From positions 1 through 64,000 of IMG/VR virus record IMGVR_UViG_3300021963_000023: a stretch of 64,000 nucleotides of DNA. One strand, 5' to 3'. Positions within the stretch are counted from its first letter, which is position 1. Each line of letters opens with the position of its first letter. The position numbers and the translations under genes were made by a program. The notes beneath the pieces were generated by a model. That model was given only the letters and a program-made list of their open reading frames with translations. It was not told the DNA's origin and did not search any database. Of this stretch, positions 2 to 38,259 are shown piece after piece.

Positions 2-472
2 ATGGATATGGATTATGAGGGAGCCAAGCATCATGATGAAATTCCTGGATCAATTCCAACACATAAAAAATACACAGATTCTGATGGTACCACATATAAC
101 AATTATAATCCATTTTATTATAACCCTAAAACTAAAACTGATGAAATGGGCTATTATGCCAAAACATATGGTACAGCAGACCCAGATATGGAATCAGAAA
201 CATTGGCCGATTTAAAAAAGAATCAACCTATTAACTGGCCAAAGTATACAGAAAAAGACAGACGTGATCCAGAAAACATGTTATCATGGGAGCAGAAAAA
301 AGCTTTGATTGCGCAAAGAGCTGAAAAAGCCGCAGCAAGAGAAGCAGCCAAGGAAAAAAGATTGGCGGCCGCTTCGCTAAAACCAGGTGTAAACGAATCG
401 GTTGTTAGGTTAACCGAAAGCGAATTGATAGAGCTGGTAAAAAAGATAATGAAACAAACAACAAAAAAATAA
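2..472 (+). CDS. hypothetical protein (5' partial) with C-terminal VVRLTESELIELVKKI motif
   Basis: ORF runs from the window edge; carries the LTES motif found at the N-termini of neighbouring genes. Confidence 0.7.
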   Translation: MDMDYEGAKHHDEIPGSIPTHKKYTDSDGTTYNNYNPFYYNPKTKTDEMGYYAKTYGTADPDMESETLADLKKNQPINWPKYTEKDRRDPENMLSWEQKKALIAQRAEKAAAREAAKEKRLAAASLKPGVNESVVRLTESELIELVKKIMKQTTKK

Positions 473-475
473 ATG

Positions 476-501
476 AAAGCCCCGATTTTTCGGGGTTTTT
501 T
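476..501 (+). terminator. intrinsic terminator
   Basis: AAAGCCCCGA-TTTT-TCGGGGTTTT followed by a T-tract. Confidence 0.75.
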
Positions 502-550
502 ATTGGTAACCATTTTGGATACATATGGGTTTTACCTATATTTATATACT

Positions 551-1051
551 ATGAAGTTTAAGGACATAATTAAGGACATTTTGATCGCTGAGAGTGAGGG
601 GCCGTCTGAACACGCAAAATGGGTTGCAAAACAAGTCTTGGTTAAGTTTATGTTTGCTGATTATAAAGAACAAAGGGGATTTGTTTGGGACTATGATCTT
701 GATGTGAGTGGGGTTTCTAATTTTGTTTTATCCGCCGGCGGTGCTGAGGATTATTACCTTCAGTATAACTTTGAAATTGATATTAGCTCATATCCTTCTT
801 ATACCCCAGCAACTTATGATGACCCAGGAGATTATGATCCCGCAGAATATGAAATTGAAATAAAACAAATTACCGTTTTTGATAACGATCAGATCATTTA
901 TGAGGGGCCAGACTTTACAAACTTCGCATCATTAAAAATTGGTGAGGTGGAATCCAGATATGGTCAAAACCGTATTAGTTATGGGGAAGGTTTTCTATAT
1001 GATTACTTTGGTGATAAAATTGAAGAAATATTAAGTGACAACGCAGACTAA
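551..1051 (+). CDS. acidic hypothetical protein with MKFKDII..E leader
   Basis: ATG at 551, 4 nt after TATTTATA; the ORF-track extension from 473 overlaps the terminator. Confidence 0.75.
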   Translation: MKFKDIIKDILIAESEGPSEHAKWVAKQVLVKFMFADYKEQRGFVWDYDLDVSGVSNFVLSAGGAEDYYLQYNFEIDISSYPSYTPATYDDPGDYDPAEYEIEIKQITVFDNDQIIYEGPDFTNFASLKIGEVESRYGQNRISYGEGFLYDYFGDKIEEILSDNAD

Positions 1052-1064
1052 AAAAATATAGTAT

Positions 1065-1178
1065 ATGGCAAACAAAAAGAAAAAACCCGTAGCTAAAAGA
1101 TCAAGAAGATCTGGGGTTAAAACAATGGAACTAGTTAAAAGAAATAACGAAATACTAAAAAAGTTTTTAACAAAATGA
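1065..1178 (+). CDS. 37-aa basic peptide (MANKKKKPVAKRSRRSG...)
   Basis: read by eye; fills the intergenic gap and its stop overlaps the next ATG (ATGA). Confidence 0.6.
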   Translation: MANKKKKPVAKRSRRSGVKTMELVKRNNEILKKFLTK

Positions 1179-1654
1179 AACAAACGTTAAACGAACAAGT
1201 TGCTAGAATTAAAGCTATGATGGTTCTTAAAGAACAACAGGAAATGACTCTTGAGCAATATATGGATGAGTTGTTAAAAGATCCTGTTGGGTTTTTAAAT
1301 AAATTAAATACTGATGAGCAATTTAAAAATGATTATATTAAATCTTACGGGCCGCAACAACCCGGTAATCCGAACAGAGCTATTTTGGAAAATGCTAAAA
1401 CTAAATTTATGATAAATAATGGGAGTACAATTACAGGACAGTTAAAAAATGATAAAACAAATGAGATTGTACTGAATTATGAAATATCCTCTTTAGATGA
1501 ATTTTTAAAATTAAACCAATTTATTAAAGATTATGAAGCAAAAGGAACACCTTTATTTGATGTAGGATTAGTAGGGCTTCTTAGAGATGTGAAAAATGGT
1601 AACGAGTTTGCTCAAGCTTTGAATATAGCAAGGGGTGCAAAGGTGTTCACATAA
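1175..1654 (+). CDS. hypothetical protein with MKQTLNEQVARIKAMM leader
   Basis: leader identical to that of the next gene. Confidence 0.8.
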   Translation: MKQTLNEQVARIKAMMVLKEQQEMTLEQYMDELLKDPVGFLNKLNTDEQFKNDYIKSYGPQQPGNPNRAILENAKTKFMINNGSTITGQLKNDKTNEIVLNYEISSLDEFLKLNQFIKDYEAKGTPLFDVGLVGLLRDVKNGNEFAQALNIARGAKVFT

Positions 1655-1682: not shown

Positions 1683-2186
1683 ATGAAACAAACATTAAAC
1701 GAACAAGTCGCAAGAATTAAAGCCATGATGAGTCTTAATGAAGATGAGTCACAAACAATGGCCATGTTGCAACAAGAGACCGAAGAATTTAACCAGAAGG
1801 TTGATGAAGATTTAAGTCCGGAAGAATATAAGGAGCTAACATGCTCAGATCCAGATGATATGGAATTGCCTAATATTGGTGATGAAGAGAAGCAAAAGGT
1901 GATGGAGTTAAAAGAAAAGATGAAAACCGCATCATTCGCTGAACTAATGCAATTGAAAAAACAATTGAAGGAATTAAAAAGACAACAACAAAACGAGCAA
2001 GTTGCCGGACCGGCCGTTATATCCTTATTGGGTGTTAGCATGCCTCCTGCTTTTGCAATGGTTATTGGTGGAATCATCTTTATAATGATATTATCTTTTT
2101 TAAGTAAGTTTATTAGATTTAATAGAACAACCACATATTGGTGTGATGGGAAGAAATCACGTCTATTTGGTTTGTTAAGATGGTAA
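1683..2186 (+). CDS. membrane-anchored protein with MKQTLNEQVARIKAMM leader
   Basis: shared leader; C-terminal hydrophobic helix. Confidence 0.8.
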   Translation: MKQTLNEQVARIKAMMSLNEDESQTMAMLQQETEEFNQKVDEDLSPEEYKELTCSDPDDMELPNIGDEEKQKVMELKEKMKTASFAELMQLKKQLKELKRQQQNEQVAGPAVISLLGVSMPPAFAMVIGGIIFIMILSFLSKFIRFNRTTTYWCDGKKSRLFGLLRW

Positions 2187-2228: not shown

Positions 2229-2969
2229 ATGAAACAGAATATTAACGAAGAGATTAGAAAAATAAAACACATGATGCGCCTTAATGAGGAGGGCAATCTT
2301 GGTGTGTTTGATAATTTTCCGCCGGAATTATTAGAATTTCTGGAAAGCAATTATTCTCACATGTACAGATTTAAGTATGATTATAATGAGAAGGCCTCTA
2401 GATTTGTGAATAGAGAGACGGGAGAGTATGATGGTGCAGGGTTTAGAAAATGGATGGATGAGAATACAGCTGATGAGTTTGTTAAAAATAAATCTAGAAT
2501 AATTAGTGCAATTAGATCTGACTTAATTACCCTTAGAAGAAGAAAACTCACAAAATTAAAATTAGACGCATATGAGGAGTTGCTAATTTCACTTCTTGGT
2601 AATAACATTACCGGGCAAGCATTAACCAGATTTGAGGCGGATATTATAATGGACCCATATGCAACAGTAGAAAGCATTAGGAGAGGTTTTGAAGAGGCTA
2701 AAAATATTCTAGATAAACACGGTAGAGTAAATCCTGATAAGGTTGAACTATCAACGGTATTCCCAGGTGGTCATATTAATTACCCAACATTTGAAAGATT
2801 TGTTGAAGATAACCCAAAATACTTAAGCACATATGAAACTTGGGACAAGTTACATAAAGAATATCAAAAACATGATATGAAAGAACTAAATGGATTTAGA
2901 ATTTATGATGGGCATTATAAAGAACTTAGATCACTATATGATTTTTTAACATCAGACAAAAAAGATTAA
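2229..2969 (+). CDS. hypothetical protein with MKQNINEEIRKIKHMM leader
   Basis: leader variant fixes the start at 2229. Confidence 0.75.
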   Translation: MKQNINEEIRKIKHMMRLNEEGNLGVFDNFPPELLEFLESNYSHMYRFKYDYNEKASRFVNRETGEYDGAGFRKWMDENTADEFVKNKSRIISAIRSDLITLRRRKLTKLKLDAYEELLISLLGNNITGQALTRFEADIIMDPYATVESIRRGFEEAKNILDKHGRVNPDKVELSTVFPGGHINYPTFERFVEDNPKYLSTYETWDKLHKEYQKHDMKELNGFRIYDGHYKELRSLYDFLTSDKKD

Positions 2970-2970: not shown

Positions 2971-3387
2971 ATGAAATTAATAGATTTATTAACAGAAGCT
3001 AAGGATAAAAAAATTAAATGCAATCATTGTGATTGGTCATGGAAAGAATCTGAAGGCGGTAAGAAGAAATACTTGTGCCACAAGTGTGGTCATGACAATA
3101 CACCAAAATCATTTGACGAGTTTGCTGAAACAAGAATGAAAGGAGCGGACAAGATTGCAACAACAGCAAAAGAGAAAGGTGGTTTAGCAATGCTTACTTA
3201 TCATCACTTTAACGTTAAAAAACCTTATTATAATAAAGCGGCCGAAGGTAAGTTTGATCTTGCTGCGGCCAAAAAAGAATTTAAACAATGTGTTAAGGAC
3301 TTATCTTCTGATATGGAACAAGTTGCATTTCAGAAATTGGTTGGACGCATTGAGGTGCTTGGTGAATTAATCATCAAACACAAATAA
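2971..3387 (+). CDS. zinc-ribbon protein with MKLIDLLTE leader
   Basis: CNHC...CHKC. Confidence 0.7.
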   Translation: MKLIDLLTEAKDKKIKCNHCDWSWKESEGGKKKYLCHKCGHDNTPKSFDEFAETRMKGADKIATTAKEKGGLAMLTYHHFNVKKPYYNKAAEGKFDLAAAKKEFKQCVKDLSSDMEQVAFQKLVGRIEVLGELIIKHK

Positions 3388-3494: not shown

Positions 3495-4130
3495 ATGAAA
3501 TTTAAAGACATATTAGTTACAAAAGGATTAGATGAAGCAACACCAGTTGAAAAACCTGAACTAGGTTCTGGAGCAGATCATTATATATTCCCATCCAAGC
3601 GTAATCCAAACAAAGTATATAAACTAGGTTCAGAACATGCTGTGGATTTCTGGTATGATTTATTTAAAAACCATCCATCAATTTTCCCTGTTGTTTATAA
3701 GAGAGGTAAAACCAGAATGAAACTAGATCGAGATAAGGTGGTGTTTCAAGACAATAACTTTGTTAAACTTAAAGCCGGGTCTATTGTCCCTGTTGCTTAT
3801 GTTGAAATGGAAAAGTTAGACCCCAAGAGAGCTGAAAACGAATGGAAGATGTTGGATTTTGCGATTACAGATATAACTGAAGATCAATGGGATTTTCAAG
3901 ACTATGTTCTCCATTTTGCAATATTTGAAAGCTCCAACATGAAACCAGATTTTGATTTAATGTTACACGTTTTTGACGAGCTAAAGATAAATTATCCAGA
4001 TGAATATAAAATGATTACAAGATTTTTGGATTTAATCATTGAAGTCAAGAAAGTTAACAAACATCCCGATTTACATATGTATAACTTTGGCTATGACATG
4101 AAGGGTAATCTAAAATGTTTGGATATATAG
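3495..4130 (+). CDS. protein-kinase-like fold protein
   Basis: LGSGADHYIF Gly-loop, VYK, MEKL, DLHMYN catalytic loop, C-terminal CLDI. Confidence 0.65.
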   Translation: MKFKDILVTKGLDEATPVEKPELGSGADHYIFPSKRNPNKVYKLGSEHAVDFWYDLFKNHPSIFPVVYKRGKTRMKLDRDKVVFQDNNFVKLKAGSIVPVAYVEMEKLDPKRAENEWKMLDFAITDITEDQWDFQDYVLHFAIFESSNMKPDFDLMLHVFDELKINYPDEYKMITRFLDLIIEVKKVNKHPDLHMYNFGYDMKGNLKCLDI

Positions 4131-4292: not shown

Positions 4293-4357
4293 CATATAGC
4301 CCCAGGTGATGAACTTGGGGTTTTTTATTGAAGATAGTTTCCCTATATTTATATTAT

Positions 4358-4810
4358 ATGAAAAAAATTAAAATAACAGAATCGCAGCTAAAGAGATTAG
4401 TTCTTAATGAACAAGGACTTAAGAATATTGGTAACAAGATTAAAGGTGGTATTCAAACTGTGGTGGATAAGGTAAAGGGTGCCCCAAAGGATAAAGAACT
4501 TACTCAACCAGGAAAACAAAGTCAGAACAGAGATCTTGATCAACTTAGAGCAGAGTGGTCTAAAATTAATCAGGACACAACCAATATGAAAGGTTATGGT
4601 GAAGCTGTTGGTCAACAAGAAAATTCAGCTAAAACCGCAGCAATGATGAAAGCTAGAATGGTCATTTTAAAAAAACTAAATAAACAACAAGCTAAATTCG
4701 GATCTGTTATTGTGGATGAAGCTCTATTCCAATTAGAAAATGGTAATTATATTAAGTTAATCGTTTTGGAATTAACAAAAGTTTGGGAAGACGAAAACGG
4801 TATTAATTAA
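4358..4810 (+). CDS. hypothetical protein with MKKIKITESQL leader
   Basis: ATG 4 nt after TATTTATA. Confidence 0.75.
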   Translation: MKKIKITESQLKRLVLNEQGLKNIGNKIKGGIQTVVDKVKGAPKDKELTQPGKQSQNRDLDQLRAEWSKINQDTTNMKGYGEAVGQQENSAKTAAMMKARMVILKKLNKQQAKFGSVIVDEALFQLENGNYIKLIVLELTKVWEDENGIN

Positions 4811-4816
4811 TAGATA

Positions 4817-5584
4817 ATGAAAAAAATTGTAAAATTAACAGAATCAGATTTAACTAAATTGGTTAAAACAATTGTTGAAAATATATCAACAGAAGGTATT
4901 CCACAGGAAGATCTTGATGTTTTAACAGCTGAAGCGCATAAGATGGTTGAAAAAGATAGAGTTAAAGCACAGGAAATCAAGCAAGAATTAGATGCAATGA
5001 GAGAAAGAATGGAGGATATGGTTAAAGGTGGAAAATTAAATTTTGATGACACTACTGTGGAAGAGGTAATGAAAGCATATACTAGTCAAAAACAACAAGA
5101 ATATGACTACTATAGTACATCATCTGCAGATCGTTATTTACAAAACTTAATTTTTGAATTTAAAAGGAAGAAAGCATACGAAGATTACGAGAGAGAAAAA
5201 ATTGAAAGAAGAAAAACAAAGAAAATCGATAAAAAAGATATTATAAATCTATTTGTAACCGCATTAGAAGGTGGTTCAAATTATTGGTATTACTTACCTA
5301 GAATTCCAGATGGGGTAAGAGAGATAATGGCAGAATTAGACATGGAACTAACTGAAGCAATAGGTGAATACGTGCTTAGAGGTGGTAGTATTGACATAAA
5401 CGACGCTGAAGACGAAGAAACTAAACTTGGTACCGTTGATATGACTAGTCTATTAGAAGCAATAGATATCCTTAAAAATGATTACACACGCGCATACGAG
5501 AATATTATTGATGAAGAATATGACGCTGATGATGCTGACATATTTTTTCAATTAGCAGTTATGGGTGAGCTTACTTTCGGATAA
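4817..5584 (+). CDS. hypothetical protein with MKKIVKLTESDL leader
   Basis: ORF; shared leader. Confidence 0.8.
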   Translation: MKKIVKLTESDLTKLVKTIVENISTEGIPQEDLDVLTAEAHKMVEKDRVKAQEIKQELDAMRERMEDMVKGGKLNFDDTTVEEVMKAYTSQKQQEYDYYSTSSADRYLQNLIFEFKRKKAYEDYEREKIERRKTKKIDKKDIINLFVTALEGGSNYWYYLPRIPDGVREIMAELDMELTEAIGEYVLRGGSIDINDAEDEETKLGTVDMTSLLEAIDILKNDYTRAYENIIDEEYDADDADIFFQLAVMGELTFG

Positions 5585-5614
5585 TACCGATATTTATATA
5601 TAAAACTTGAAATA

Positions 5615-6538
5615 ATGAAAAGAACAATTAGATTGACGGAAAGCGAATTAACAGCTTTGGTAAAAAAAATATTAAATGAAGTTGCTGAAGAACCGGTACT
5701 AGATAAACAAACCAAAATATTTGGTAATTTCTTCTTCGGTGAGGGTAAAACAAAACCAATGAGTTTCAACGGTGCACAAGTTACACAAGCCGATGTTGAT
5801 AGATTAATTAAAGAAATGGCGATGTTTATTAAGAATACAGGTACACTTCAAACATTACAAAAATTTGGTAGAACCGAAGGAGGTTATTCTAATAACCAAA
5901 ATATACCAAAATTCATTAGTCTTAACATAGGTACATCACACACAGGATCGGGCGAAGCAAATTCAAATGTTGCTCAAGGTAGATTTAGTTTCTTAAGTGG
6001 TATGGTGATGAAAGCGTTTGATTTACTTGGTGTCGATACATCAATAGCTAGATCGGTAGTAATCACAAATTCTAACACATCTTATTCACCAACAAGTTTG
6101 GATAAAAATTTCTTTGACCCTAAAAAACTTAAACCAGAAGATATTGAAAGATGGGGACACATTAGTATTACCAACTTAGCTACTATGGGTCATAAAACAG
6201 GTGGTATTCAACAAATACAAAGAAATTTAAATAATGCTTCAAGTGATATTAACAATATATTTGTTGATGGGGTTAACGAAGAAAAGGTTGTTTTTTTTAT
6301 TAAGAGACTTCAAACATTCTCCGACATTCAAGATTTAAGCAATTCAATCAATGCCGGCGGTCAATGGGCTTCGTTAGAGGATTTTTTAAACGACCAGCTT
6401 TTTGATGATATGGATGAAATGAGAGCAGTCGCCACCCATTTACAAAAATGTGCAGCCACTAGTGGAAAACAAAAAGATACTATTAGATTGGTACCAAAAA
6501 CAGGAGGAATGTTTATCAGTATTGGATTAGGTAACTAA
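5615..6538 (+). CDS. LTES-leader protein with possible OmpA_C-like domain
   Basis: FFFGEGK...TSHTGSGEANSNVAQGR resembles the OmpA peptidoglycan-binding motif. Confidence 0.55.
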   Translation: MKRTIRLTESELTALVKKILNEVAEEPVLDKQTKIFGNFFFGEGKTKPMSFNGAQVTQADVDRLIKEMAMFIKNTGTLQTLQKFGRTEGGYSNNQNIPKFISLNIGTSHTGSGEANSNVAQGRFSFLSGMVMKAFDLLGVDTSIARSVVITNSNTSYSPTSLDKNFFDPKKLKPEDIERWGHISITNLATMGHKTGGIQQIQRNLNNASSDINNIFVDGVNEEKVVFFIKRLQTFSDIQDLSNSINAGGQWASLEDFLNDQLFDDMDEMRAVATHLQKCAATSGKQKDTIRLVPKTGGMFISIGLGN

Positions 6539-6571: not shown

Positions 6572-7156
6572 ATGATATTAACAGAAGCTCAATTATCAAC
6601 TTTGATAAAAAAAATTATAAGGGAACAGGTAGATAGTACATCAATAACATCAAAACCAACATCTTCTTCTGGTGCAAAACTACCAACCCCAATACAAATA
6701 AAAATATTATTATCTACTAAAAAGGGTGAAGAAACATATTTGGTCTCTTTTGATAAAGTAAAACAAGTTAAAGATGGATGTGAATTTGAGGGAACATTTA
6801 GAGGCGACACAAAAAGACACACTTTTATGTATAAGTGTGATGGGACATTATATTGGAAACAGGGTATGCTTTCATCAAATACTGAGGTAGAAATTTCTGC
6901 AGAAGCGGCTAAATTACTAGCAAAAGCGTGTGGTTGCGATGTATATGCATCCAATAAGCCTGCATCGGGAATGCAGAGTCAAATGGCTGAAAATAATGGC
7001 AGTGTAACTAAATCAATTTCCTTTGAAAGTATTGAAGAGTTTATGTACAACGAATATAGTAAGAAAAACAATAAAAATATAAGTGTTAATTTAACATTTG
7101 ATGGTAGACAAGTTTTAGCAAATATAAACGGCTCAAAAGTCCCAGTAAAAAGATAA
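6572..7156 (+). CDS. hypothetical protein with MILTEAQL leader
   Basis: ORF; shared leader. Confidence 0.75.
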   Translation: MILTEAQLSTLIKKIIREQVDSTSITSKPTSSSGAKLPTPIQIKILLSTKKGEETYLVSFDKVKQVKDGCEFEGTFRGDTKRHTFMYKCDGTLYWKQGMLSSNTEVEISAEAAKLLAKACGCDVYASNKPASGMQSQMAENNGSVTKSISFESIEEFMYNEYSKKNNKNISVNLTFDGRQVLANINGSKVPVKR

Positions 7157-7163
7157 TAAAAAT

Positions 7164-7188
7164 AAACCCCGATAATTCGGGGTTTTTT
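7164..7188. terminator. bidirectional terminator
   Basis: AAACCCCGA/TCGGGGTTT between convergent genes. Confidence 0.75.
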
Positions 7189-8090
7189 TATTTAATTTGG
7201 AATATATTAATTTCTAAATTTGGATTCTCTTCCTTAAACTTGTTGAATCTCATTATTTGTTCATCCATATCATCAAATATGTTGATGGTATCAATTGAAG
7301 GATTATTCTTTAACATGTCCTTAATCCTTTCAGGTTTTTCCCTATTGTCGTTTTTAAAGTCATAGTAATCAAATACATACAAACCATCTAGTTTTTCTTT
7401 AACTACCGGCTCAAACTTAGCCATTCTGTTTGTCATCAATATCGTTATGGAATTTGGAATAGTTGAATATTCATTATAAAAACCTTTGGTTTGTTCAATT
7501 GGTTGAACATCAAATGGTTTAAGACTATCTATCTGTCCCCACCAACCTTTGTGTGGCCAATCCTTACCGGTTAACTCTTTATATTTTTCTTTACCAGGAT
7601 TTGGCATTGGTGAATCCATTAATGTCCCGTCAAAATCAAAAACATTTAATGTTGTTGGGGCACCCTTTGCTTTGAATGGAACTTGATATAATATCTCTTC
7701 AATCTTACCTGTAACGTTAAATGATTCCGCCAATTCTTCCCATGCTGTAATCTCGTTAGAATCCTTCGGTTTAGCCCCATTTGCGGCGTTTATAGCCACG
7801 GTTATATGTGGAATAGCATTCTGTGATAAAGACGTCTCTATACCCACCGCAATGGCCTTATCTGACTTACCTAGTTTGGTTACTCTTAATGTAACCGTCT
7901 GTCCTATCTTTTCTTTTAAATTTTCAGGTAACTCACCCATTTTAATTGTCATATGATGACATATTGCTTTCCAATCATTAGGGAACGCCACATGGTTAAG
8001 AATAGCCGATCTAGATCCGGGGTCTAAAACAACAGCAGAATAGGATACTTTATAACTTTGGTCTTCAGTAAGAATGTCTAATAATCTCAT
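7188..8090 (-). CDS. RNA end-healing enzyme: 2H cyclic phosphodiesterase + HAD phosphatase (Swiss-army-knife RNA repair-like)
   Basis: two HxT motifs (HMTI, HITV), then FDFDGTL and FDD HAD motifs; MRLLDILTE leader. Confidence 0.7.
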   Translation of the reverse strand: MRLLDILTEDQSYKVSYSAVVLDPGSRSAILNHVAFPNDWKAICHHMTIKMGELPENLKEKIGQTVTLRVTKLGKSDKAIAVGIETSLSQNAIPHITVAINAANGAKPKDSNEITAWEELAESFNVTGKIEEILYQVPFKAKGAPTTLNVFDFDGTLMDSPMPNPGKEKYKELTGKDWPHKGWWGQIDSLKPFDVQPIEQTKGFYNEYSTIPNSITILMTNRMAKFEPVVKEKLDGLYVFDYYDFKNDNREKPERIKDMLKNNPSIDTINIFDDMDEQIMRFNKFKEENPNLEINIFQIK

Positions 8091-9294: not shown

Positions 9295-9877
9295 GAGACA
9301 GCTTAATAATTTGATCTCACCTAACGTTGAGGGTTTAGAAGATTTGATGAATCAGATCATTGATAAATTCCCGGAGGTTGAGGATTATAAAGATAAGCTA
9401 ATAGATTTCATAAATAAATCTAATTGTAAGAAAATTGAATTTGCTACAATGCAGCATGCTGGCGGGTTATCTTTACATAATTCAGTGTTATTAAATAAGA
9501 TTTTATTAAATAGAGATCTTAATTCATTAATTTTTATTATATTTCATGAAATTGCTCACCAATATCAGTTTAAAAAATATGGTGCAGAAAAAATGTATGA
9601 GCTTTACACAGGGAAAATACATTTAGAAGATGCTGTTGATTTTTTATATAATACAGAAATAACTGCGGATGAATTTGCATTTAGAAAAGTAAAAGAGTTT
9701 TACAAATTGGGTTTATTAAAAACCATAACAGATATGCGTATGTATAAAAAAATGGGTAAACACAATTTAGCCAATATGTATAATCAGGTTAAGAAAATCT
9801 TATCAGTAAGAAAAGGTGATAGCCCCGATGAGGTGAGCGAAGTCCTTTATAATTTTATTAAAATTAAAATAGAATAA
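9275..9877 (+). CDS. zincin-like metallopeptidase-motif protein
   Basis: HEIAH...EITADEFA; MRIVITERQL leader. Confidence 0.65.
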   Translation: MRIVITERQLNNLISPNVEGLEDLMNQIIDKFPEVEDYKDKLIDFINKSNCKKIEFATMQHAGGLSLHNSVLLNKILLNRDLNSLIFIIFHEIAHQYQFKKYGAEKMYELYTGKIHLEDAVDFLYNTEITADEFAFRKVKEFYKLGLLKTITDMRMYKKMGKHNLANMYNQVKKILSVRKGDSPDEVSEVLYNFIKIKIE

Positions 9878-31384: not shown

Positions 31385-31627
31385 ATGATGAACAAAATCA
31401 AAAATTTAAAGAACAAGGAAAAGAGACTGGTCCTATACAAAGATACATCACTAATGTTAGCGATGTTCTTTCTCCCATTTGGCTACGATGCTTTATTCAA
31501 ATTAATAATGGACATGAGTGGTTCATATTGGGTAGCCGATATCGTTTTTTATTCTATTTCAGGTTGTTTTTGGTTGTCTTATATACTTCTTACGAAGTAC
31601 TTAAATAAAAAAGAAACCTCCAATTAG
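31385..31627 (+). CDS. small two-TM membrane protein
   Basis: two hydrophobic segments. Confidence 0.6.
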   Translation: MMNKIKNLKNKEKRLVLYKDTSLMLAMFFLPFGYDALFKLIMDMSGSYWVADIVFYSISGCFWLSYILLTKYLNKKETSN

Positions 31628-31755
31628 GAGGTTTTTTTATTTTCTGGTTTGTCTGGTTGTTGTAAACCTTTTTTAGTTTCATCTTTTTTAACATAATGAT
31701 TTTTTGTGGCATCCTTATGTTTTTCTAAGATCTTCTTTTTTTCTTCTTCGGTCAT
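31624..31755 (-). CDS. 43-aa charged peptide MTEEEKKKILEKH...
   Basis: read by eye; continues the minus-strand operon. Confidence 0.5.
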   Translation of the reverse strand: MTEEEKKKILEKHKDATKNHYVKKDETKKGLQQPDKPENKKTS

Positions 31756-31765
31756 TTTAAACACA

Positions 31766-32086
31766 TTACTCATATTTTAATTGTTTTTTGTTTTCTTGGA
31801 GACATCTCTCTTTTTTATTTTTTAATACTAGACATTTTTCATATTCTTCAGTTTCTTCTAATATTTCAATCATTCTGTCTATGATTTCGATTAATAATTC
31901 TAAATCATTATTGTAGCTTAATATTGTCTTTTTATTAATATACTCAAAAATCATATCATTGTCAACGTTTCTTATGTAGTCATATATCATTCTAACCTCA
32001 TCATCATCATAATTACCGACGTGAAGTACCCTAGTTGCTTGCAAAAGAAATGATACTGACATATTCATAAATATCCCTTCATTCAT
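31766..32086 (-). CDS. hypothetical protein with UVR-like C-terminus
   Basis: ETEEYEKCLVLKN. Confidence 0.6.
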   Translation of the reverse strand: MNEGIFMNMSVSFLLQATRVLHVGNYDDDEVRMIYDYIRNVDNDMIFEYINKKTILSYNNDLELLIEIIDRMIEILEETEEYEKCLVLKNKKERCLQENKKQLKYE

Positions 32087-33763: not shown

Positions 33764-35209
33764 ATGCATTTAGTAATAACTGAAAGACAGCTAAAGGATT
33801 TAATCAGATTAAGCTCTGTAAATCAAGATCTTAGTGAAGAGGGTGAGATTGGTTCACCGGAAGCTGGAACATCTAGTGATGGGGAGCAAAAGACTGGTGC
33901 AACCAAGTGGGAGAGCGGTGTAACTAGAGGACCGGCTAATCAAATTGGACCGACCACATGGTCAAACATTGTGGGTTCAACCTTAAAAAGAGGTAAAGCT
34001 AATCCATTAGGTGAGCAAATTAACCCAGTAGTTGACATGGTAACTAACGCTATGGCTATTGATTCTGCCATGAATGATACCAAGTATGTGGAACTTACAA
34101 CCCCATGGAGAACAAAAATAAAAATACCTGCAGACGCTCAATATAAACTTTGGGAACCTGAAGCAGATAGAACAAAATCAATATCAAAAGATCGAATAAG
34201 AGAAATTGGTAGTAGAGTATATTGGAGGGTTGGGTATGATAAAAAAATTGAGGACGATGTTTATGAATTGGTTAAAAATGAACAATTAACAGGAGTTTTA
34301 CCGGATGGATCTTTAAGATATTTCACAACAAATGACGGTAAAGATTGGATTTTCGTAGTAACAAGAACCGGTGTTGATCCATCAGATAAATCTGGTATTT
34401 GGACCATTAAATATAAAACCTTTGTGCACCATCCAAGCCCAACAGCAGCATATGAGAATTATGATGACAAAAAATACATTAAAAAAAGTACATCAACAAT
34501 AATTGTTGAGTTTTTTAATGAATATGGTGAATTAATTTTACAAGTAACTCTTAGTGTTGCATTGGGAATATTAACAATGGGGCAAAGTTTATGGATACAA
34601 GCGTTAGCTGAATTTGCATTAAATGCAGCATTTGCTGCCAAACAATTACTTGTTGATAAAAATAATTTTGGAGCCGCATTGTCCTTAATTATTGGCGTGG
34701 TGCCATTTGCATCAATAGGCTTAAGATATGGGTTAGGTAAATCATTAGCAGCATTATCAAAGTACGGCCCGGAATTATCGGCTGCAAAAAGTTTAGATGA
34801 GGCACAAGAAATTATATCCAGATTTTCGGCTACAGAACAAACATTAATAAAAAAAGCGTTATCTCTACCTGAAGCGACGCTAAAAAAAGCGATGAATGAA
34901 GGTTCTGTAAAAATTTTCCTAGAAGGAATAAAAAAAGGAACTATAGATATTGCTAAAATCCCGTTACAACAAAGAACGTGGGTCTGGCAGACCACATTTG
35001 AGTTACTTACAGGTGGCCTTATTATTTGGCAAGGTATTAAGTATAAAAAAGAAATGATGGAGAAAGAAAGTAAAGAATTTTCAAATCTTTCATTAACAAT
35101 GTGGACCCCACAAAATGGTTTCGATACTCCAGAATTTAGGAAATGGGCGGAAGAAATGGGTGTAAAATATGGTGAGGGGTATAAAAAAGAAGAAAACCAA
35201 CCTAAATAA
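33764..35209 (+). CDS. leader-bearing multi-TM protein
   Basis: MHLVITERQL leader; hydrophobic helical cluster around aa 255-330. Confidence 0.75.
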   Translation: MHLVITERQLKDLIRLSSVNQDLSEEGEIGSPEAGTSSDGEQKTGATKWESGVTRGPANQIGPTTWSNIVGSTLKRGKANPLGEQINPVVDMVTNAMAIDSAMNDTKYVELTTPWRTKIKIPADAQYKLWEPEADRTKSISKDRIREIGSRVYWRVGYDKKIEDDVYELVKNEQLTGVLPDGSLRYFTTNDGKDWIFVVTRTGVDPSDKSGIWTIKYKTFVHHPSPTAAYENYDDKKYIKKSTSTIIVEFFNEYGELILQVTLSVALGILTMGQSLWIQALAEFALNAAFAAKQLLVDKNNFGAALSLIIGVVPFASIGLRYGLGKSLAALSKYGPELSAAKSLDEAQEIISRFSATEQTLIKKALSLPEATLKKAMNEGSVKIFLEGIKKGTIDIAKIPLQQRTWVWQTTFELLTGGLIIWQGIKYKKEMMEKESKEFSNLSLTMWTPQNGFDTPEFRKWAEEMGVKYGEGYKKEENQPK

Positions 35210-35241: not shown

Positions 35242-36270
35242 ATGAAAGAAATTTTAAGTGAAATTAATAGAAACAGAACATTGATGGGATTACCAGTGTT
35301 AACAGAAGGAACCGGATTAGCAGGTATACTTGACGCCGCAGTAGGCGGAATGGAATTAACCATGCAGAAACAAGTGACCAAAGAGATTGTTGACAAGTTT
35401 GCTGGTAGTTTCACTTTTGGCAATGCCGCGGCTAAAACTAAATTCATAAACGGTGGTCTGGCTAGTGTTAAAACTGCATTAGGAAAAATATCAAGAAAAG
35501 AAGCGTTAGCAATAATTGTTCAAATAGATAATTCACAAATTCCTAAATTAGCGTCATTTATAATGAAAAATGAAGATGGTTTGGTTGATACTGTAAGTCA
35601 ATTGATTCAAAAAGGGGTTCCAGTAAAAGATATTAAAGCGAAGCTTGGTACACTTACTGATATTCCTGATACGGTAATCAATACAATGATTAAAAATATT
35701 GAAATAGATGTTCTATTTACACCAGAAAGAATAACATCATTTGCAAAAGCTATTGAAACTTCTGGAGGTAAAAACTTAAAAAAGTTAACACAGGAAGCTA
35801 TTGATACATTTAGAACATCAAATCCAGGTGCTACGGAACAACAAATTGCTGAGCATATGGTTAGGAATCTACCAGATAACTTTTTTAGTGCTAAGAATGT
35901 TGAATTATTAACTAGAAAATTTGGTAGTGGATTTAAATCTATTTTGGGGGTGCTTATTTTGAATAAAAAACGTTCTGCCCCATCATGGTGGAAGATACTT
36001 GGTATATTGGGTGCTTCAACCACTATTGCTATTTATACCGCAATTGGCGATCATATTAGTAGAGAATATATTCCTGATGCGATAGACATTCTTGAGAAGA
36101 ATCCAAAATATAAATGTTACGCTAAGTACGTTACACCAGGTAAAGATAAAAACCATTTTGTTGTGGTAGAACCAGATAATACACGAGCTATTATTAAATT
36201 CGACAATAAAAGATTTTGGTATGTGGATAAAAATGATACACCAATAAAAGAATTGACTTGTAACGAGTAA
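35242..36270 (+). CDS. leader-bearing membrane protein
   Basis: MKEILSEINR...LTE; TM segment WWKILGILGA. Confidence 0.7.
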   Translation: MKEILSEINRNRTLMGLPVLTEGTGLAGILDAAVGGMELTMQKQVTKEIVDKFAGSFTFGNAAAKTKFINGGLASVKTALGKISRKEALAIIVQIDNSQIPKLASFIMKNEDGLVDTVSQLIQKGVPVKDIKAKLGTLTDIPDTVINTMIKNIEIDVLFTPERITSFAKAIETSGGKNLKKLTQEAIDTFRTSNPGATEQQIAEHMVRNLPDNFFSAKNVELLTRKFGSGFKSILGVLILNKKRSAPSWWKILGILGASTTIAIYTAIGDHISREYIPDAIDILEKNPKYKCYAKYVTPGKDKNHFVVVEPDNTRAIIKFDNKRFWYVDKNDTPIKELTCNE

Positions 36271-36272
36271 TT

Positions 36273-37214
36273 ATGCTAAAAAATTTAAAGGAACAAGCAG
36301 ATAAAAGGGCTGGTGCACCAAAAGGCGCAGCAACAGTGAATGACACAAATTCTTCCGCAGATGCTAGAGCCGGTGGAAGTGCTGGTTCTCAAGATAAAAG
36401 AGCCGGTGGAAATGCTGGTGGAAGTGCTGGTTCTCAAGATAAAAGAGCCGGTGGAAATCCAGCAACAGTGACTTCTGATGTATTTGCGTGTTTATTAAAT
36501 TCTAAAGAAACCGATACTCAACCAAAAATTGTAAAAACAAGTAGTCCAAATCAGGTAAGACAAGTCTTTTCTGATGTTATTTTTTACTTTTTTAGTAATT
36601 ATTATTTTCAATTTACGGATAAGACCGGTAAATTCGACAAAACAAAACATTATAAGGGCACTTGGAAATGTGATGGAGATAAAGATTATATAATAAACAC
36701 CGAGGATGGTGATGATTATAGTAGTAAAAGAGGAAATTGGAAAGGAGTTCCTAACAATAGTAATAACAACAACAATAATAACAATAATAACAATACAGGA
36801 TTAGTAGATACAACTTTAACAGGCGATGAATTGAAGGCCGGTAAAGTTGTTAAAATTGGTATGAAAGGTTCAATTGTTGGAACCATACAAGATTTATTAA
36901 TTAAATTAGGATATACAAATGTAAGTAGTTCTGGTGAAAAAGACAATAAGTTTGGGAGAAGAACAAAACAAATGGTGAAAGATTTCCAAACAAACAATGG
37001 TTTAACCGATGATGGTGAAGTAGGTAAAGATACGTGGCCAAAATTAAACGATCCAGCAGCAGTTAAAAATAGTGCATCAAGCACATCTAGTTTAAGTGGA
37101 TCTGCCAAAACTTCAGTTGCTAAAGATGGTGAAACAGTTGCTGGTTCAGATGTTATTATTGTTAACGAAAAACTTAAAAAAACATTAAGAGAAAACCTAT
37201 TAAAGTTTAATTAA
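36273..37214 (+). CDS. peptidoglycan-binding domain protein with low-complexity repeats
   Basis: IQDLLIKLGY...FG...VKDFQ...GLTDDGEVGKDTW; poly-Asn. Confidence 0.75.
   Translation: MLKNLKEQADKRAGAPKGAATVNDTNSSADARAGGSAGSQDKRAGGNAGGSAGSQDKRAGGNPATVTSDVFACLLNSKETDTQPKIVKTSSPNQVRQVFSDVIFYFFSNYYFQFTDKTGKFDKTKHYKGTWKCDGDKDYIINTEDGDDYSSKRGNWKGVPNNSNNNNNNNNNNNTGLVDTTLTGDELKAGKVVKIGMKGSIVGTIQDLLIKLGYTNVSSSGEKDNKFGRRTKQMVKDFQTNNGLTDDGEVGKDTWPKLNDPAAVKNSASSTSSLSGSAKTSVAKDGETVAGSDVIIVNEKLKKTLRENLLKFN
36366..36457 (+). repeat. in-frame 45-bp tandem duplication (GGSAGSQDKRAGGN)
   Basis: ggtggaagtgctggttctcaagataaaagagccggtggaaat occurs twice. Confidence 0.85.
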
Positions 37215-37240
37215 TAGTTAATTAGTAGATATTTATATTA

Positions 37241-37338
37241 GGAGTTTGATTGGTTTGGTCACCATCAAATGATAATACGAAAAAAACGAAAGGAGGTATT
37301 CTAAATCTCGACAAAGGAGCTCTAAAGGCTCTTTTGTT
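37241..37338 (+). ncRNA. candidate ~100-nt sRNA
   Basis: TATTTATA 3 nt upstream, 5' hairpin, AAAGGAGGT, terminal hairpin with T-tract. Confidence 0.4.
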
Positions 37339-37368
37339 CGTTTATAGTGTTAAGGGTATTTATTATAT

Positions 37369-38259
37369 ATGAAATTCAGGGATTTATTACAAGATTTATT
37401 GGAAGAACAATTACCCTGCGAAAAGGTAGTAACGTATGATATGCTTAAACAAGCAAAAGATTGGTGGAATAATCGTTTAAGTGATCCAAATATAATTATG
37501 AAAATTCTTAGAGCAAAATTTACTGTTGATGAGTTAAAGACTTGGACCGATAAAGAAATTGATAGAACTGTGAATTATACGGTTCAGGATTTGCAAGCAG
37601 CTAGAAAAAAAATTGATTTAATAAATAAATTGTCATATTATAATGACCCTAAGGGCAGTGAGTTTATGTATGTAAAATCAAATGAACCAAATATCATAAA
37701 TATTAATTGTGCATATGTTCCTAAGTATAACAATGACCAATTGGTTTCATCCTTGGTTCACGAAATACAACATCATATACATTATTTAATTGGTGGTGAT
37801 GAGTATTTGAATGATATACGTGGTGGTATAAAAATTGAAAAGAATCCATATCGTCCACAGGTTCCAGTGTCCGAGAAAAGTTGGTTTGATAAAGCAAAGG
37901 AATATATTAATAGTTTAACTGGTTCAAAAAAGGTAGATAAGTTAATTCCTGTTAATGATGGTCAGTTTACAAAGAGGTACCAAAGCCGAGTTTGGGAGTA
38001 TTTTAAATCTAAACAATCTTATGCGTGTAATCCAACTGAAATACAATCAAGGGTAGCTCAAGTTAGAATGCTTTTAAATTTAAAGCCTGGCCAAGACATT
38101 ACAATAGAGATGTTAAAAAATCAAAAAGTATATGAAGAATTTGAGCTCAATTTAATGTGTTGGGGAGGTAGAAAAGATAATGTTTCTTTACAAGATTATT
38201 TGAATAACCTAAATTCATTGGTAAAGAACGATACACTAAATAAATCAACACAAGTATAA
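37369..38259 (+). CDS. HExxH metallopeptidase-motif protein with MKFRDLL..LEE leader
   Basis: HEIQH...PTEIQSR. Confidence 0.65.
   Translation: MKFRDLLQDLLEEQLPCEKVVTYDMLKQAKDWWNNRLSDPNIIMKILRAKFTVDELKTWTDKEIDRTVNYTVQDLQAARKKIDLINKLSYYNDPKGSEFMYVKSNEPNIININCAYVPKYNNDQLVSSLVHEIQHHIHYLIGGDEYLNDIRGGIKIEKNPYRPQVPVSEKSWFDKAKEYINSLTGSKKVDKLIPVNDGQFTKRYQSRVWEYFKSKQSYACNPTEIQSRVAQVRMLLNLKPGQDITIEMLKNQKVYEEFELNLMCWGGRKDNVSLQDYLNNLNSLVKNDTLNKSTQV

What the first reader, a model, noticed from the sequence alone, without database searches (positions are those of the whole stretch)
400..38259. About 28 unrelated proteins share short N-terminal leaders ending in (I/L)xE: candidate capsid-targeting and injection tags
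Seen: three related leader types. MKxIxLTESxL..LV..I.E occurs at 4358, 4817, 5615, 6572, 8140, 9275, 9877, 10838, 11726, 16046, 16082, 21127, 26216 and 33764. MKQTLNEQVARIKAMM.L.E occurs at 1175, 1683, 2229 and 35242. MKFKDIL...E occurs at 551, 2971, 3495, 8090, 14022, 15577, 19623 and 37369. The motif also appears at the C-terminus of 2-472. Downstream domains are unrelated: kinase, GNAT, C39 peptidase, zincins, 2H/HAD, OmpA-like and TM proteins. Housekeeping genes (GMP reductase, ligase, glycosyltransferases) lack it. Known: T4 internal proteins use a short N-terminal capsid-targeting sequence removed by the prohead protease at (L/I)xE. Inference: a large modular library of head-packaged, co-injected effectors, in which new cargo is recruited by gaining a 15-22 aa tag.
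Basis: partly seen in the sequence, partly recalled or inferred. Interest (0 to 1): 0.84.

Follow-up and report, generated by a model that had tools for sequence, protein, structure and literature searches.

The report
Swappable capsid-loading tags, jumbo phage
About 25 otherwise unrelated proteins of an uncultured 251-kb T4-like phage begin with one of a few short conserved leader peptides that end in the cut site expected for the phage's head protease; these are most likely tags that load proteins into the capsid, and the same tags head thousands of unannotated proteins in water metagenomes.

Summary
Leaders sit exactly at the given starts. They are recovered by leave-one-out profiles and by blind clustering of N-termini, and they are conserved at protein level, not DNA level. 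The proteins behind them are unrelated.

The window is the first 64 kb of a metagenome-assembled, distantly T4-like jumbo phage. It has a gp21-type (Peptidase_S77) prohead protease, a Gp23 capsid protein and T4-like head-gene order.

- Type A (MKKxxRLTESDLxRLVKRVIxE) and type B (MNLQENIxRIKxMMGhxxE) are widespread: at least 4,154 protein clusters, and 11-27 genes in each of four related 295-412 kb phage genomes.
- Conservation stops right after the terminal [ILV]xE.
- The capsid protein has LINE|A at the position that aligns with T4 gp23's known cleavage site LTE|A.
- Homologous cargos carry different leader types in different phages.
- Leader genes share an upstream TATTTATA motif with virion genes.

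Best reading (about 0.6): these are capsid-targeting propeptides in the T4 sense, removed by the prohead protease. They belong to new sequence families and occur on a much larger scale than in T4. Packaging, cleavage and injection are all untested. Type C looks specific to this phage. The kinase and OmpA calls were not confirmed.

The parts
407..472 (+). C-terminal type A motif (RLTESELIELVKKIM) at the end of ORF 2-472
   Evidence: HMM hit at aa 136-150. The ORF is complete even if the contig is read as a circle.
551..1051 (+). Type C leader protein. Leader at 551-592: MKFKDIIKDILIAE|
   Evidence: A cargo homologue elsewhere carries a type B leader.
1175..1654 (+). Type B leader protein. Leader at 1175-1234: MKQTLNEQVARIKAMMVLKE|
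1683..2186 (+). Type B leader protein (leader at 1683-1742). The cargo has a hydrophobic segment.
2229..2969 (+). Type B leader protein (leader at 2229-2288)
2971..3387 (+). Short leader MKLIDLLTE| (2971-2997), which clusters with type A. Zn-ribbon cargo.
   Evidence: Homologous cargo carries A, B-like and short leaders elsewhere.
3495..4130 (+). Type C leader protein (leader at 3495-3536)
   Evidence: TATTTATA lies 14 nt upstream. The kinase call was not confirmed.
4358..4810 (+). Type A leader protein (leader at 4358-4411)
4817..5584 (+). Type A leader protein (leader at 4817-4879), the most canonical copy
   Evidence: About 17 contigs per metagenome match only nt 4817 to about 4855.
5615..6538 (+). 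Type A leader protein (leader at 5615-5680)
   Evidence: Absent, together with the next gene, from a strain in run X4.
6572..7156 (+). Type A leader protein (leader at 6572-6625)
7188..8090 (-). Short leader MRLLDILTE| (8064-8090). 2H phosphoesterase plus HAD cargo.
8140..9294 (+). Type A leader protein (leader at 8140-8196). Zn-ribbon and weak GNAT cargo.
   Evidence: A homologue in L256 carries a type B leader.
9275..9877 (+). Type A leader protein (leader at 9275-9331, ending NVE|G). HExxH zincin-like cargo.
   Evidence: The AlphaFold2 model has pLDDT below 50 for aa 1-5 and 8-14, and a confident fold from about aa 20.
9877..10854 (+). Type A first half only (MNILLTE|, 9877-9897), followed by a C39 peptidase domain
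10838..11701 (+). Diverged type A leader (10838-10903)
   Evidence: Weak in the leave-one-out test.
11726..12184 (+). Type A leader protein (leader at 11726-11797)
12181..14022 (-). Type C leader protein with a GTG start (leader at 13984-14022). 613 aa.
   Evidence: A homologue in L202 has a different leader.
14012..15577 (-). Type C leader protein (leader at 15539-15577)
15567..16046 (-). Type A leader protein (leader at 15990-16046)
16082..17194 (+). Type A leader protein (leader at 16082-16144)
   Evidence: A homologue in L034 carries an ExEKxRILxLHE-type leader.
18376..19623 (-). Type C leader protein (leader at 19582-19623). PcfJ-like is a lead only.
   Evidence: Homologues in L099 and L100 carry a type A leader.
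20681..21127 (-). Type A leader protein (leader at 21065-21127)
26216..26545 (+). Diverged type A leader (26216-26278)
   Evidence: Weak in the leave-one-out test.
31624..31773 (-). 49-aa ORF that consists only of an ExEKxRILxLH-type leader. Possibly a remnant.
33764..35209 (+). Type A leader protein (leader at 33764-33838). The cargo has a hydrophobic segment.
35242..36270 (+). Weak type B-like leader (35242-35307): MKEILSEINRNRTLMGLPVLTE|
   Evidence: Not recovered in the leave-one-out test. It resembles the metagenomic ENIxRIKxMMGL form.
37369..38259 (+). Type C leader protein (leader at 37369-37407). The cargo has an HExxH motif.

Best explanation
The leaders are capsid-targeting propeptides in the sense of the T4 internal-protein CTS. 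Each is a short amphipathic N-terminal helix that docks a newly made protein onto the scaffolding core of the prohead. After shell assembly, the gp21-type (Peptidase_S77) prohead protease removes it by cutting after Glu in [I/L/V]-x-E, which leaves the cargo inside the head with the DNA.

Types A and B have two such sites: one at residues 5-9 (for example LTE|S) and one at residues 18-25 (for example VINE|Q). Several sequence-unrelated leader families (A, B, ExEKxRILxLHE and the local type C) do the same job and can be exchanged, so any gene that acquires about 15-25 codons becomes cargo.

Shown by computation: the leaders themselves, their sharp C-terminal boundary, their modularity, the presence of the protease, and the matching site in the capsid protein. 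Inferred: docking to the core, cleavage, residence in the virion and, least certain of all, ejection into the host.
For: 1. The phage is T4-like in its head module.
- It has TerL, a gp20-type portal, Peptidase_S77 (Pfam E 2e-23) and Gp23 (E 1e-73).
- Gene order is portal, two small ORFs, protease, acidic scaffold, MCP, as in T4 genes 20-67-68-21-22-23.
- The protease aligns to T4 gp21 (PDB 5JBL, E 5e-13) and keeps ELNHP and SSRG.

2. Cut-site logic.
- T4 gp23 reads FLTE|AEIGG. The PDB mature chain has 456 of 521 residues, so it starts at residue 66.
- In the alignment this column is (Y/H/F)LINE|A in G000, G004, G006 and G007, and LIYE|A in G005.
- This matches the leader end [VI][IVL]xE.
- The protease N-terminus GLLIE|Y parallels T4 QLLIE|T.
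- In orthologues of a head-module protein (71080-72387), a variable N-terminal stretch ends in [IL]xE just before the conserved APIDY..PERMDP. In G007 that stretch is itself leader-like.

3. Sharp boundary.
- In 115 distinct IMG/VR type A leaders, positions left free by the search pattern are [VI] in 101, [IVL] in 108 and E in 100 of 115. Information content then falls to background.
- In 112 type B leaders, the Met lies exactly 4 residues upstream in 107, although ATG was not part of the pattern, and the leader ends in G[LVI]xxE.

4. Modularity. Cargos 40-58% identical carry different leader types, and the homology starts right after the leader. The AlphaFold2 model of the 9275 protein has pLDDT below 50 for residues 1-5 and 8-14, and a confident fold from about residue 20.

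5. Association with the protease. All six leader-bearing contigs that are at least 82% complete by CheckV's estimate and were searched with the Peptidase_S77 profile have it (G004, G005, G006, G008, G009), or have its clear homologue (G007).

6. Timing. TATTTATA lies within 60 nt upstream of 10/26 leader genes and 22/69 virion-module genes. These include TerL, portal, protease and scaffold. The figures are 0/18 for replication genes and 11/138 for the rest. Fisher p is 8e-5 for leader genes and 6e-6 for virion genes, each against replication and other genes combined. The enrichment is similar in G004 and G007.

7. Precedent. The T4 CTS is a 10-19 aa propeptide on otherwise diverse internal proteins, and it is sufficient to package foreign proteins (PMC9026906, PMC3012670, PMC8442874).

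8. Helix character. Type A is strongly amphipathic as a helix, at the 99.8th percentile of proteome windows.
Against: - There are no proteomic or biochemical data. The phage is known only from metagenomes.
- [ILV]xE is common in this AT-rich proteome, occurring in 30% of any 22-residue window. The site alone is therefore weak evidence; only its fixed position counts.
- Types A and B have no sequence similarity to the T4 CTS.
- The A and B motifs also occur internally and at C-termini: in ORF 2-472, and in the conserved protein 179062-180603 and its orthologues. This fits a general docking helix as well as it fits a cleaved N-terminal tag.
- The 9877 protein lacks the second site, and its leader runs into the C39 domain.
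- That TATTTATA is a late promoter is itself an inference.
- Cargos show no charge bias of the kind seen in the basic T4 internal proteins.
Confidence: 0.6

Rival explanations
1. The leader is a general docking helix for some other common partner, such as a phage chaperone, an assembly or replication factory, the membrane, or the conserved acidic protein 179062-180603. It is not cleaved and has nothing to do with the capsid.
For: - The A and B motifs occur internally and at the C-terminus of a protein conserved across the clade, and at the C-terminus of ORF 2-472.
- Type A is strongly amphipathic.
- The databases hold multi-leader proteins and proteins with a C-terminal leader.
Against: - Conservation ends exactly at a Glu in an [ILV]xE context in two unrelated leader families.
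- The same tetrapeptide type stands at the T4-homologous maturation site of the capsid protein.
- Leader genes share the upstream motif of virion genes.
- Internal copies in polyprotein-like ORFs fit excision by a protease equally well.
Confidence: 0.22
2. It is a bacteriocin- or RiPP-style leader recognised by the C39 peptidase encoded in the window (9877-10854), used for processing or export.
For: - The core L-T-x-x-(D/E)-L-x-x-(I/L) resembles, from my own knowledge, the L-S-x-x-E-L-x-x-I helix of double-glycine leaders.
- A C39 domain scores above Pfam's cut-offs.
- The genome carries several radical-SAM-like genes at 218-226 kb.
Against: - No Gly-Gly follows the helix. The next positions are K and R/K in 115 leaders.
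- The C39 protein has no homologue in G004 or G007, which carry 20-27 leaders each.
- Cargos are 80-600 aa proteins with enzyme folds, not short core peptides.
- The C39 protein itself carries the leader.
Confidence: 0.03
3. It is a DNA-level element: a repeated gene-start cassette kept for recombinational shuffling or translation initiation, like the mobile regulatory cassettes of T4-type phages. The peptide would then be a by-product.
For: - A conserved upstream TATTTATA lies close to many leader ATGs.
- Many metagenome contigs match only the roughly 40 nt that encode the leader of gene 4817.
- Whole leader genes are gained and lost between strains.
- A paper on cassette shuffling in T4-type phages exists (PMC2839356, seen in the listing and not read).
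Against: - Synonymous codons differ freely among copies, including TCN against AGY for the conserved Ser and four different Leu codons.
- Amino-acid conservation holds at distances where the DNA is not alignable.
- The strain-level deletion joins at gene ends, not inside leaders.
- Shuffling may be a side benefit, but it cannot explain the peptide constraint.
Confidence: 0.03
4. It is chance similarity from AT-rich codon usage, or plain paralogy of whole genes.
For: K, I, N, E and L are abundant, and [ILV]xE occurs in 30% of 22-residue windows.
Against: - Shuffled N-termini give 0 pairs with a score of 40 or more, against 40 observed.
- The type A expression matches 230 of 1807 N-termini but only 2 of 1079 internal windows in related contigs.
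- 4,154 clusters match at E of 1e-3 or better in 1.84 billion proteins, most of them from residue 1.
- The cargos are unrelated by BLASTP.
Confidence: 0.01

Closest known systems
T4 capsid targeting sequence (CTS) of internal proteins IPI, IPII, IPIII and Alt, removed by prohead protease gp21
   Same: - A short N-terminal propeptide sits on otherwise unrelated, fast-evolving accessory proteins.
- It ends in (L/I)xE.
- The phage has a gp21-family protease, a Gp23 capsid protein and the same head-gene order.
- The repertoire differs strongly between related phages (PMC9026906, PMC3012670).
   Different: - Types A and B are longer (18-25 aa against about 10), carry two candidate sites, and share no sequence with MKTYQEFIAE. 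Only the local type C (for example MKFKDIIKDILIAE) looks similar, and only superficially.
- There are at least three or four leader families per genome instead of essentially one.
- There are 11-28 tagged genes per genome, and thousands of cargo clusters in metagenomes.
- Cargos reach 613 aa and show no basic bias.
- The motifs also occur internally in a conserved protein.
- Nothing has been shown experimentally.
Propeptides of head and ejection proteins in giant phages phiKZ, 201phi2-1 and SPN3US
   Same: These are jumbo phages with a gp21-related protease that cuts after Glu. Many head proteins are processed, propeptides contain several sites, paralogues share conserved N-termini, and some ejection proteins have transmembrane segments (PMC5694885).
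   Different: - Those motifs are (S/A/G)xE or AxE, and the propeptides are mostly longer than 100 aa.
- No short portable consensus tag shared by dozens of unrelated proteins is reported in the papers read.
- The present phage is closer to T4 (Gp23/S77 Pfam families) than to the phiKZ group.
Encapsulin cargo-loading peptides and P22 scaffold-fusion loading
   Same: A short portable peptide directs unrelated cargo into an HK97-fold shell (from my own knowledge).
   Different: Those peptides are C-terminal, bind the shell or the scaffold directly, and are not removed by a protease. There is no sequence relation.

Membership tests
T4-type CTS / internal head proteins | Short (10-20 aa) N-terminal peptide shared by proteins that are otherwise unrelated | tested here: met
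   Leaders are 9-25 aa, and the cargos are unrelated except for one pair.
T4-type CTS / internal head proteins | The peptide ends at the prohead-protease motif (L/I)xE, and similarity stops there | tested here: met
   This is at sequence level only; cleavage itself has not been observed.
T4-type CTS / internal head proteins | The phage encodes a gp21-family (Peptidase_S77) prohead protease with intact catalytic residues | tested here: met
   The protease is also present in the leader-bearing relatives tested.
T4-type CTS / internal head proteins | The capsid protein is matured at the same kind of site | tested here: met
   LINE|A aligns with T4 gp23 LTE|A. The T4 mature start follows from the 456-aa PDB chain. 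Cleavage in this phage is inferred.
T4-type CTS / internal head proteins | Sequence similarity of the tag to the T4 CTS (MKTYQEFIAE) | tested here: not met
   Types A and B are unrelated to it. Type C shows only a superficial likeness (M-K-aromatic ... I-A-E).
T4-type CTS / internal head proteins | The proteins are present in the virion with processed N-termini | not testable with these tools
   The phage is metagenome-assembled. No proteome is available.
T4-type CTS / internal head proteins | The tag is sufficient to package a foreign protein, and the cargo is ejected with the DNA | not testable with these tools
   This needs an experiment.
Double-glycine (C39-processed) leaders | Gly-Gly (or GA/GS) cleavage site after the amphipathic helix | tested here: not met
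   The positions after L-(V/I) are K and R/K, with no GG.
Double-glycine (C39-processed) leaders | The cognate C39 peptidase is conserved wherever the leaders occur | tested here: not met
   There is no homologue of the 9877 protein in G004 or G007.
Sec, Tat or lipoprotein signal peptides | Hydrophobic core of 10 or more residues after a basic N-terminus | tested here: not met
   The leaders are charged and amphipathic. A separate set of 12-15 proteins in the same genome carries ordinary signal peptides.
DNA-level mobile or regulatory cassettes | Conservation is at nucleotide level and equal to or higher than at peptide level | tested here: not met
   There is free synonymous variation.
Giant-phage (phiKZ/SPN3US) long propeptides | Propeptides longer than 100 aa, cut at (S/A/G)xE | tested here: not met
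   The leaders are 9-25 aa with I, L or V at P3. Only ORF 179062-180603, with an internal A motif at about aa 335, could be of this kind.

The most novel reading that the evidence does not exclude
A cosmopolitan clade of uncultured freshwater and marine jumbo T4-like phages uses a small set of interchangeable, sequence-defined loading tags: RLTESDL-type, ENIxRIKxMM-type and ExEKxRILxLHE-type. The tags mimic helices of the phage's own core proteins, and copies of them sit in the scaffold N-terminus and in a conserved acidic protein. Through them, dozens of different accessory proteins per virion are loaded into the capsid, sometimes as multi-tag polyproteins that the head protease cuts apart. 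If so, thousands of unannotated metagenomic proteins could be read directly from sequence as virion-packaged, probably host-injected, cargo.
Probability: 0.45. Interest if true: 0.85.

Novelty: new variant of a known kind. Interest (0 to 1): 0.72.

Why it matters
If the tags are capsid-loading signals, four things follow.
1. They give a purely sequence-based way to pick out packaged, and possibly injected, proteins in uncultured jumbo phages. At present that needs virion proteomics on isolates.
2. They define a very large natural cargo library. At least 4,154 protein clusters carry type A alone, almost all without annotation. This is a likely reservoir of early-acting counter-defence and host-takeover proteins.
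3. They show that the T4 principle, a conserved tag on a diverse cargo, scales to several exchangeable tag families, to dozens of genes per genome and to polyprotein forms.
4. They offer new portable peptides for loading proteins into phage capsids in laboratory work.

If the tags do something else, they are still among the most widespread unannotated N-terminal motifs in aquatic viral metagenomes, and they need an explanation.

Tried and rejected
- A megablast of 20 kb of the window against GenBank phages gave no match. A tblastn of a 24-aa leader against the same collection also gave no match. The query may be too short, or may have been filtered.
- The nearest cultured T4-like relatives by MCP are Flavobacterium phage immuto, Rhodothermus RM378 and Microcystis Mel-JY01. 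None carries a type A leader. The uncultured record LR756508 gives only weak hits. No proteome of a tagged phage could therefore be found.
- Full-text searches for RLTESDL, LTESDL and LTESEL returned no relevant paper. A search for capsid targeting in jumbo phage metagenomes also returned none.
- Pfam, PHROGs and NCBIfam have no model covering the leader, and most cargos are ORFans.
- The isoelectric point of the cargos shows no bias against the rest of the proteome.
- An exact-pattern scan for type C in IMG/VR gave only 12 loci, roughly my own back-of-envelope chance estimate. Type C is therefore treated as local to this phage.
- A Foldseek search with the AlphaFold2 model of the 9275 cargo gave only weak zincin matches, with E above 0.3.
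- The Atlas leads (PcfJ for 18376-19623, OmpA for 16082-17194) are below the level that can be relied on.
- Names of database cluster members gave only 'hypothetical protein'.
- The C39 and RiPP reading and the DNA-cassette reading were considered and rejected, for the reasons given under the rival explanations.

Full report
WHAT THE WINDOW IS

The window is the first 64 kb of a single 251,149-bp contig with 32% G+C. The contig is a phage.
- It encodes a large terminase, a gp20-type portal (phrog_213), a Peptidase_S77 prohead protease (Pfam E 2e-23), an acidic scaffold-like protein and a Gp23-family major capsid protein (Pfam E 1e-73) at 72-81 kb.
- These are followed by long tail and fibre modules.
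- The order is portal, two small ORFs, protease, scaffold, MCP. This matches T4 genes 20-67-68-21-22-23 as annotated in NC_000866.
- The protease aligns with T4 gp21 (PDB 5JBL, E 5e-13) and keeps the ELNHP and SSRG motifs.
- The nearest GenBank capsid proteins are only 29-42% identical: an uncultured 484-kb phage, Rhodothermus RM378 and Flavobacterium immuto phages.
- Near-identical DNA is found only in marine, estuarine and freshwater metagenomes, so this is an uncultured phage.

A type A profile run over all six frames of the whole genome finds 14 copies with E between 8e-10 and 7e-6.
- Each begins at the ORF's Met, and all lie between 4.3 and 34 kb.
- The scan also finds the C-terminal copy in ORF 2-472 and a weak internal copy at nt 180037.

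Leave-one-out profiles recover 12 of 14 type A, 3 of 4 type B and 5 of 8 type C members as the best hit outside the training set.

- The A family has 16 members. It now includes 2971 and 8090, whose MK(L/R)(I/L)D(L/I)LTE is the short form of A. The C family has 6 members and the B family 3.
- The same comparison also recovers the expected signal-peptide and paralogue groups.
- 40 N-terminal pairs score 40 or more, against 7-9 for internal windows and none for shuffled N-termini.

With the leader cut off, only one pair of cargos is related. Codons differ freely between copies, including TCN against AGY for the conserved Ser, so the peptide is what is conserved.

The copy at 35242 is at best a distant B. 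The copy at 9877 has only the first half of A before its C39 domain starts.

THE LEADERS ARE NOT PRIVATE TO THIS GENOME

Type A:
All but one of the 132 pattern matches in these loci stand at the start of an open frame.
- Among 115 distinct peptides, the positions the pattern left free read K, R/K, [VI] (101), [IVL] (108), x, E (100). From the next residue but one, information content drops to background.
- The consensus is MKK(I/V)(I/V)RLTESDLxRLVKR(V/I)IxE, with a sharp end.

Type B:
- A second pattern, for E-N-I-x-R-I-(K/R)-x-M-M, hit at least 120 loci.
- In 107 of 112 distinct cases a Met lies exactly four residues upstream, although ATG was not part of the pattern. The leader then runs on to G(L/V/I)xxE.

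Other families:
- A further family, xxE(S/E)EKxRILx(L/M)HExATKxxYLxE, turns up in the same contigs. In the window it appears as a 49-aa leader-only ORF at 31624-31773.
- Type C gave only 12 hits, roughly my own chance estimate. I treat it as local to this phage.

Database counts:
- A 30-position profile matches 4,154 clusters at E of 1e-3 or better among 1.84 billion representatives, and most of the top 150 matches start at residue 1.
- A word-indexed search found 1,539 clusters of 60-190 aa. All are 'hypothetical', and none has a Pfam domain.

No profile library covers the leader, and no paper in the library contains the motif string.

WHICH PHAGES CARRY THEM

The roughly 40-kb contigs that carry the leaders are 13-14% complete fragments by CheckV's estimate. 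The complete ones are 295-412 kb.
- Four such genomes carry 20, 11, 20 and 27 type A ORFs.
- Their capsid proteins are 60-70% identical to that of G000.
- Every near-complete one tested has Peptidase_S77. In G007 the homologue is evident from the sequence.
- Cultured T4-like relatives outside this clade have none.

I fetched G004 and G007 whole. Both have A, B and ExEK-type leaders in clusters.

Very few G000 cargos have any homologue in G004 or G007, although the capsid proteins are about 68% identical. The tagged set is therefore a fast-turnover accessory set in which only the tag is kept.

Reads laid on 4300-10200 show the same thing at strain level.
- A freshwater population lacks the two leader genes 5615-7156.
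- About 17 unrelated contigs per metagenome match only the roughly 40 nt that encode the leader of gene 4817.

LEADERS ARE EXCHANGEABLE

Homologous cargos carry different leader types in different phages:
- The HExxH protein 9275 (type A in G000) is 38-45% identical to seven ORFs. Five begin MNLQE(N/T/H)IR(R/K)(I/V)L(K/R)EE; the other two have related forms such as MRLEETIRRILREE. The alignment becomes solid right after the leader.
- 8140 (A) matches an ORF with MNLQENILRIKEMMGLSE.
- 551 (C) matches ORFs with MKNLNENIQRIKQMMNTINE.
- 19623 (C) matches ORFs with an A leader.
- 16082 (A) matches an ORF with the ExEK leader.
- The Zn-ribbon of 2971 occurs behind A, B-like and short leaders.
- A peptidoglycan-binding cargo related to 36273 occurs behind canonical A, while endolysin-type relatives have no leader.

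AlphaFold2 on the 9275 alignment gives pLDDT below 50 for residues 1-5 and 8-14. The confident fold starts at about residue 20, right after NVE|G.

WHY THE PROHEAD PROTEASE IS THE LIKELY PARTNER

In T4, gp21 cuts after Glu in (L/I)xE, and the internal proteins carry a 10-19 aa CTS that is removed in this way (PMC9026906, PMC5694885, PMC8442874).

T4 sequences fetched here show the following:
- gp23 reads FLTE|AEIGG. The mature PDB chain has 456 of 521 residues, so it begins at residue 66.
- gp24 reads MAKINELLRE|S.
- gp21 reads QLLIE|T.

The corresponding features in this clade are:
- Aligned with T4 gp23, the capsid proteins have (Y/H/F)LINE|A at the T4 site, or LIYE|A in G005. This is the same kind of tetrapeptide as the leader end [VI][IVL](N/K/S)E.
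- The protease starts G(L/I)LIE|YDAG in three genomes.
- The scaffold has a conserved N-terminal helix that ends LLKE|S or SLNE|Q before its acidic tract, and it has several (I/L)NE sites.
- The ORF in the gp67 position starts ...K(I/L)TE|SY.
- Orthologues of the head-module protein 71080-72387 have N-terminal stretches of different length and sequence. In five of six they end in [IL]xE immediately before the conserved APIDY..PERMDP. In G007 that stretch is DLERLIRKIIKE, the second half of leader A.

Types A and B each contain two such sites, at residues 5-9 and at residues 18-25.

EXPRESSION CONTEXT

The octamer TATTTATA lies 11-44 nt upstream of the start of TerL, portal, protease, scaffold and many tail genes, and of many leader genes.
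- Counted within 60 nt upstream, it is present at 10/26 leader genes, 22/69 virion-module genes, 0/18 replication genes and 11/138 others. Fisher p is 8e-5 for leader genes and 6e-6 for virion genes, each against replication and other genes combined.
- ATATTTAT is enriched about threefold upstream of leader genes in G004 and G007, and it is present before their protease and scaffold genes.
- That this is a late promoter is my inference from the genes it precedes.
- Contigs from a metatranscriptome library cover parts of four leader genes. This shows little more than presence.

COMPLICATIONS

- The motifs are not strictly N-terminal. ORF 179062-180603 is acidic and 513 aa long. It has a C-like N-terminus, an A motif at about residue 335 and a B-like motif at its C-terminus. 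Its orthologues in G004, G007 and L025 keep both the internal A motif, which ends (I/V)xE in three of the four sequences, and the C-terminal B-like motif.
- The database also holds proteins with two or three A leaders in series, and one with a C-terminal copy.
- Both facts fit a protease that cuts polyproteins, and helices that co-assemble with like helices in the core. They also fit a plain docking helix.
- [ILV]xE is frequent in this proteome, at 30% of windows. Only its fixed place carries weight.
- Cargo charge is unbiased.
- The cargo functions are mostly unknown. C39 peptidase is solid. 2H/HAD is borderline. GNAT and SprT are weak. The 9275 family is zincin-like by HExxH, with weak fold matches. 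Kinase is not supported. OmpA and PcfJ are leads only.
- Two cargos have hydrophobic segments.

VERDICT

The most likely mechanism is T4-type capsid targeting with removal by the S77 protease (confidence about 0.6). Injection into the host is a further, weaker inference from the T4 and giant-phage precedents.

It is not a member of the T4 CTS sequence family, but it most probably works like it. I file it as a new variant of a known kind: new tag families, several interchangeable tags per phage, a far larger cargo set, and polyprotein forms.

The main rival is an uncleaved docking helix for another partner (about 0.2). The C39/RiPP, DNA-cassette and chance readings are rejected by tests made here.

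Noticed in passing
window 39720-40116 (-): ARAGORN predicts a phage-encoded tmRNA with tag peptide GNVYNNMEVAGLLATSNVAVA.
   Followed up: no
window 45593-50489 (-): A block of 21 tRNA genes, all on the minus strand, interleaved with small ORFs. G+C is raised here, at 0.35-0.37.
   Followed up: no
window 48042-61756: A run of ORFs with ordinary Sec or lipoprotein signal peptides. It includes two very large secreted proteins (51456-55386), beta-barrel-like small proteins and a Ser/Glu/Lys low-complexity protein (60341-61756). These look like host-surface-type (Bacteroidota-like) proteins carried by the phage.
   Followed up: no
G000 179062-180603 (L007:7062-8603), outside the window: An acidic 513-aa protein with a C-like N-terminus, an internal type A motif (about aa 335, ending VNE|A) and a C-terminal type B-like motif. 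The internal and C-terminal motifs are conserved in the orthologues of G004, G007 and L025. It may be a core or hub protein that the leaders imitate.
   Followed up: partly
whole genome; e.g. window 3481, 4346, 16057/16058, 19637, 26203, 33752: The octamer TATTTATA lies 11-44 nt upstream of starts of virion genes and leader genes and is absent before replication genes. It is a putative late promoter, so close to the ATG that the transcripts would be nearly leaderless. It is the reverse complement of the T4 late promoter box TATAAATA (the T4 box is from my own knowledge).
   Followed up: partly
window 5584-7185: In freshwater run X4, a contig at depth 32.6 joins 5583 to 7186 with one extra base. 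That strain therefore lacks the two leader genes 5615-6538 and 6572-7156. Another variant, in runs X1 and X3, replaces 4690-4816 with 19 nt that contain TATTTATA.
   Followed up: partly
window 31624-31773 (-): A 49-aa ORF that consists of an ExEKxRILxLH-type leader and little else. It is probably the remnant of a tagged gene.
   Followed up: no
proteins P0121, P0122, P0125, P0126, P0127, P0132, P0136 (public database): Natural ORFs with two or three type A leaders in series (leader-cargo-leader-cargo), and one with a C-terminal leader. They may be polyproteins, or fused neighbouring genes.
   Followed up: partly
G000 218828-226481, outside the window: About six adjacent paralogous genes whose N-termini carry Cys-rich motifs (for example CxxPW...CC), which look like radical-SAM/SPASM enzymes. 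They lie among glycosyltransferase-like genes. They were not scanned against the family libraries.
   Followed up: no
window 27078-31317 and 40551-43791: Clusters of glycosyltransferase-like genes without leaders. These functions were judged by eye and were not scanned.
   Followed up: no
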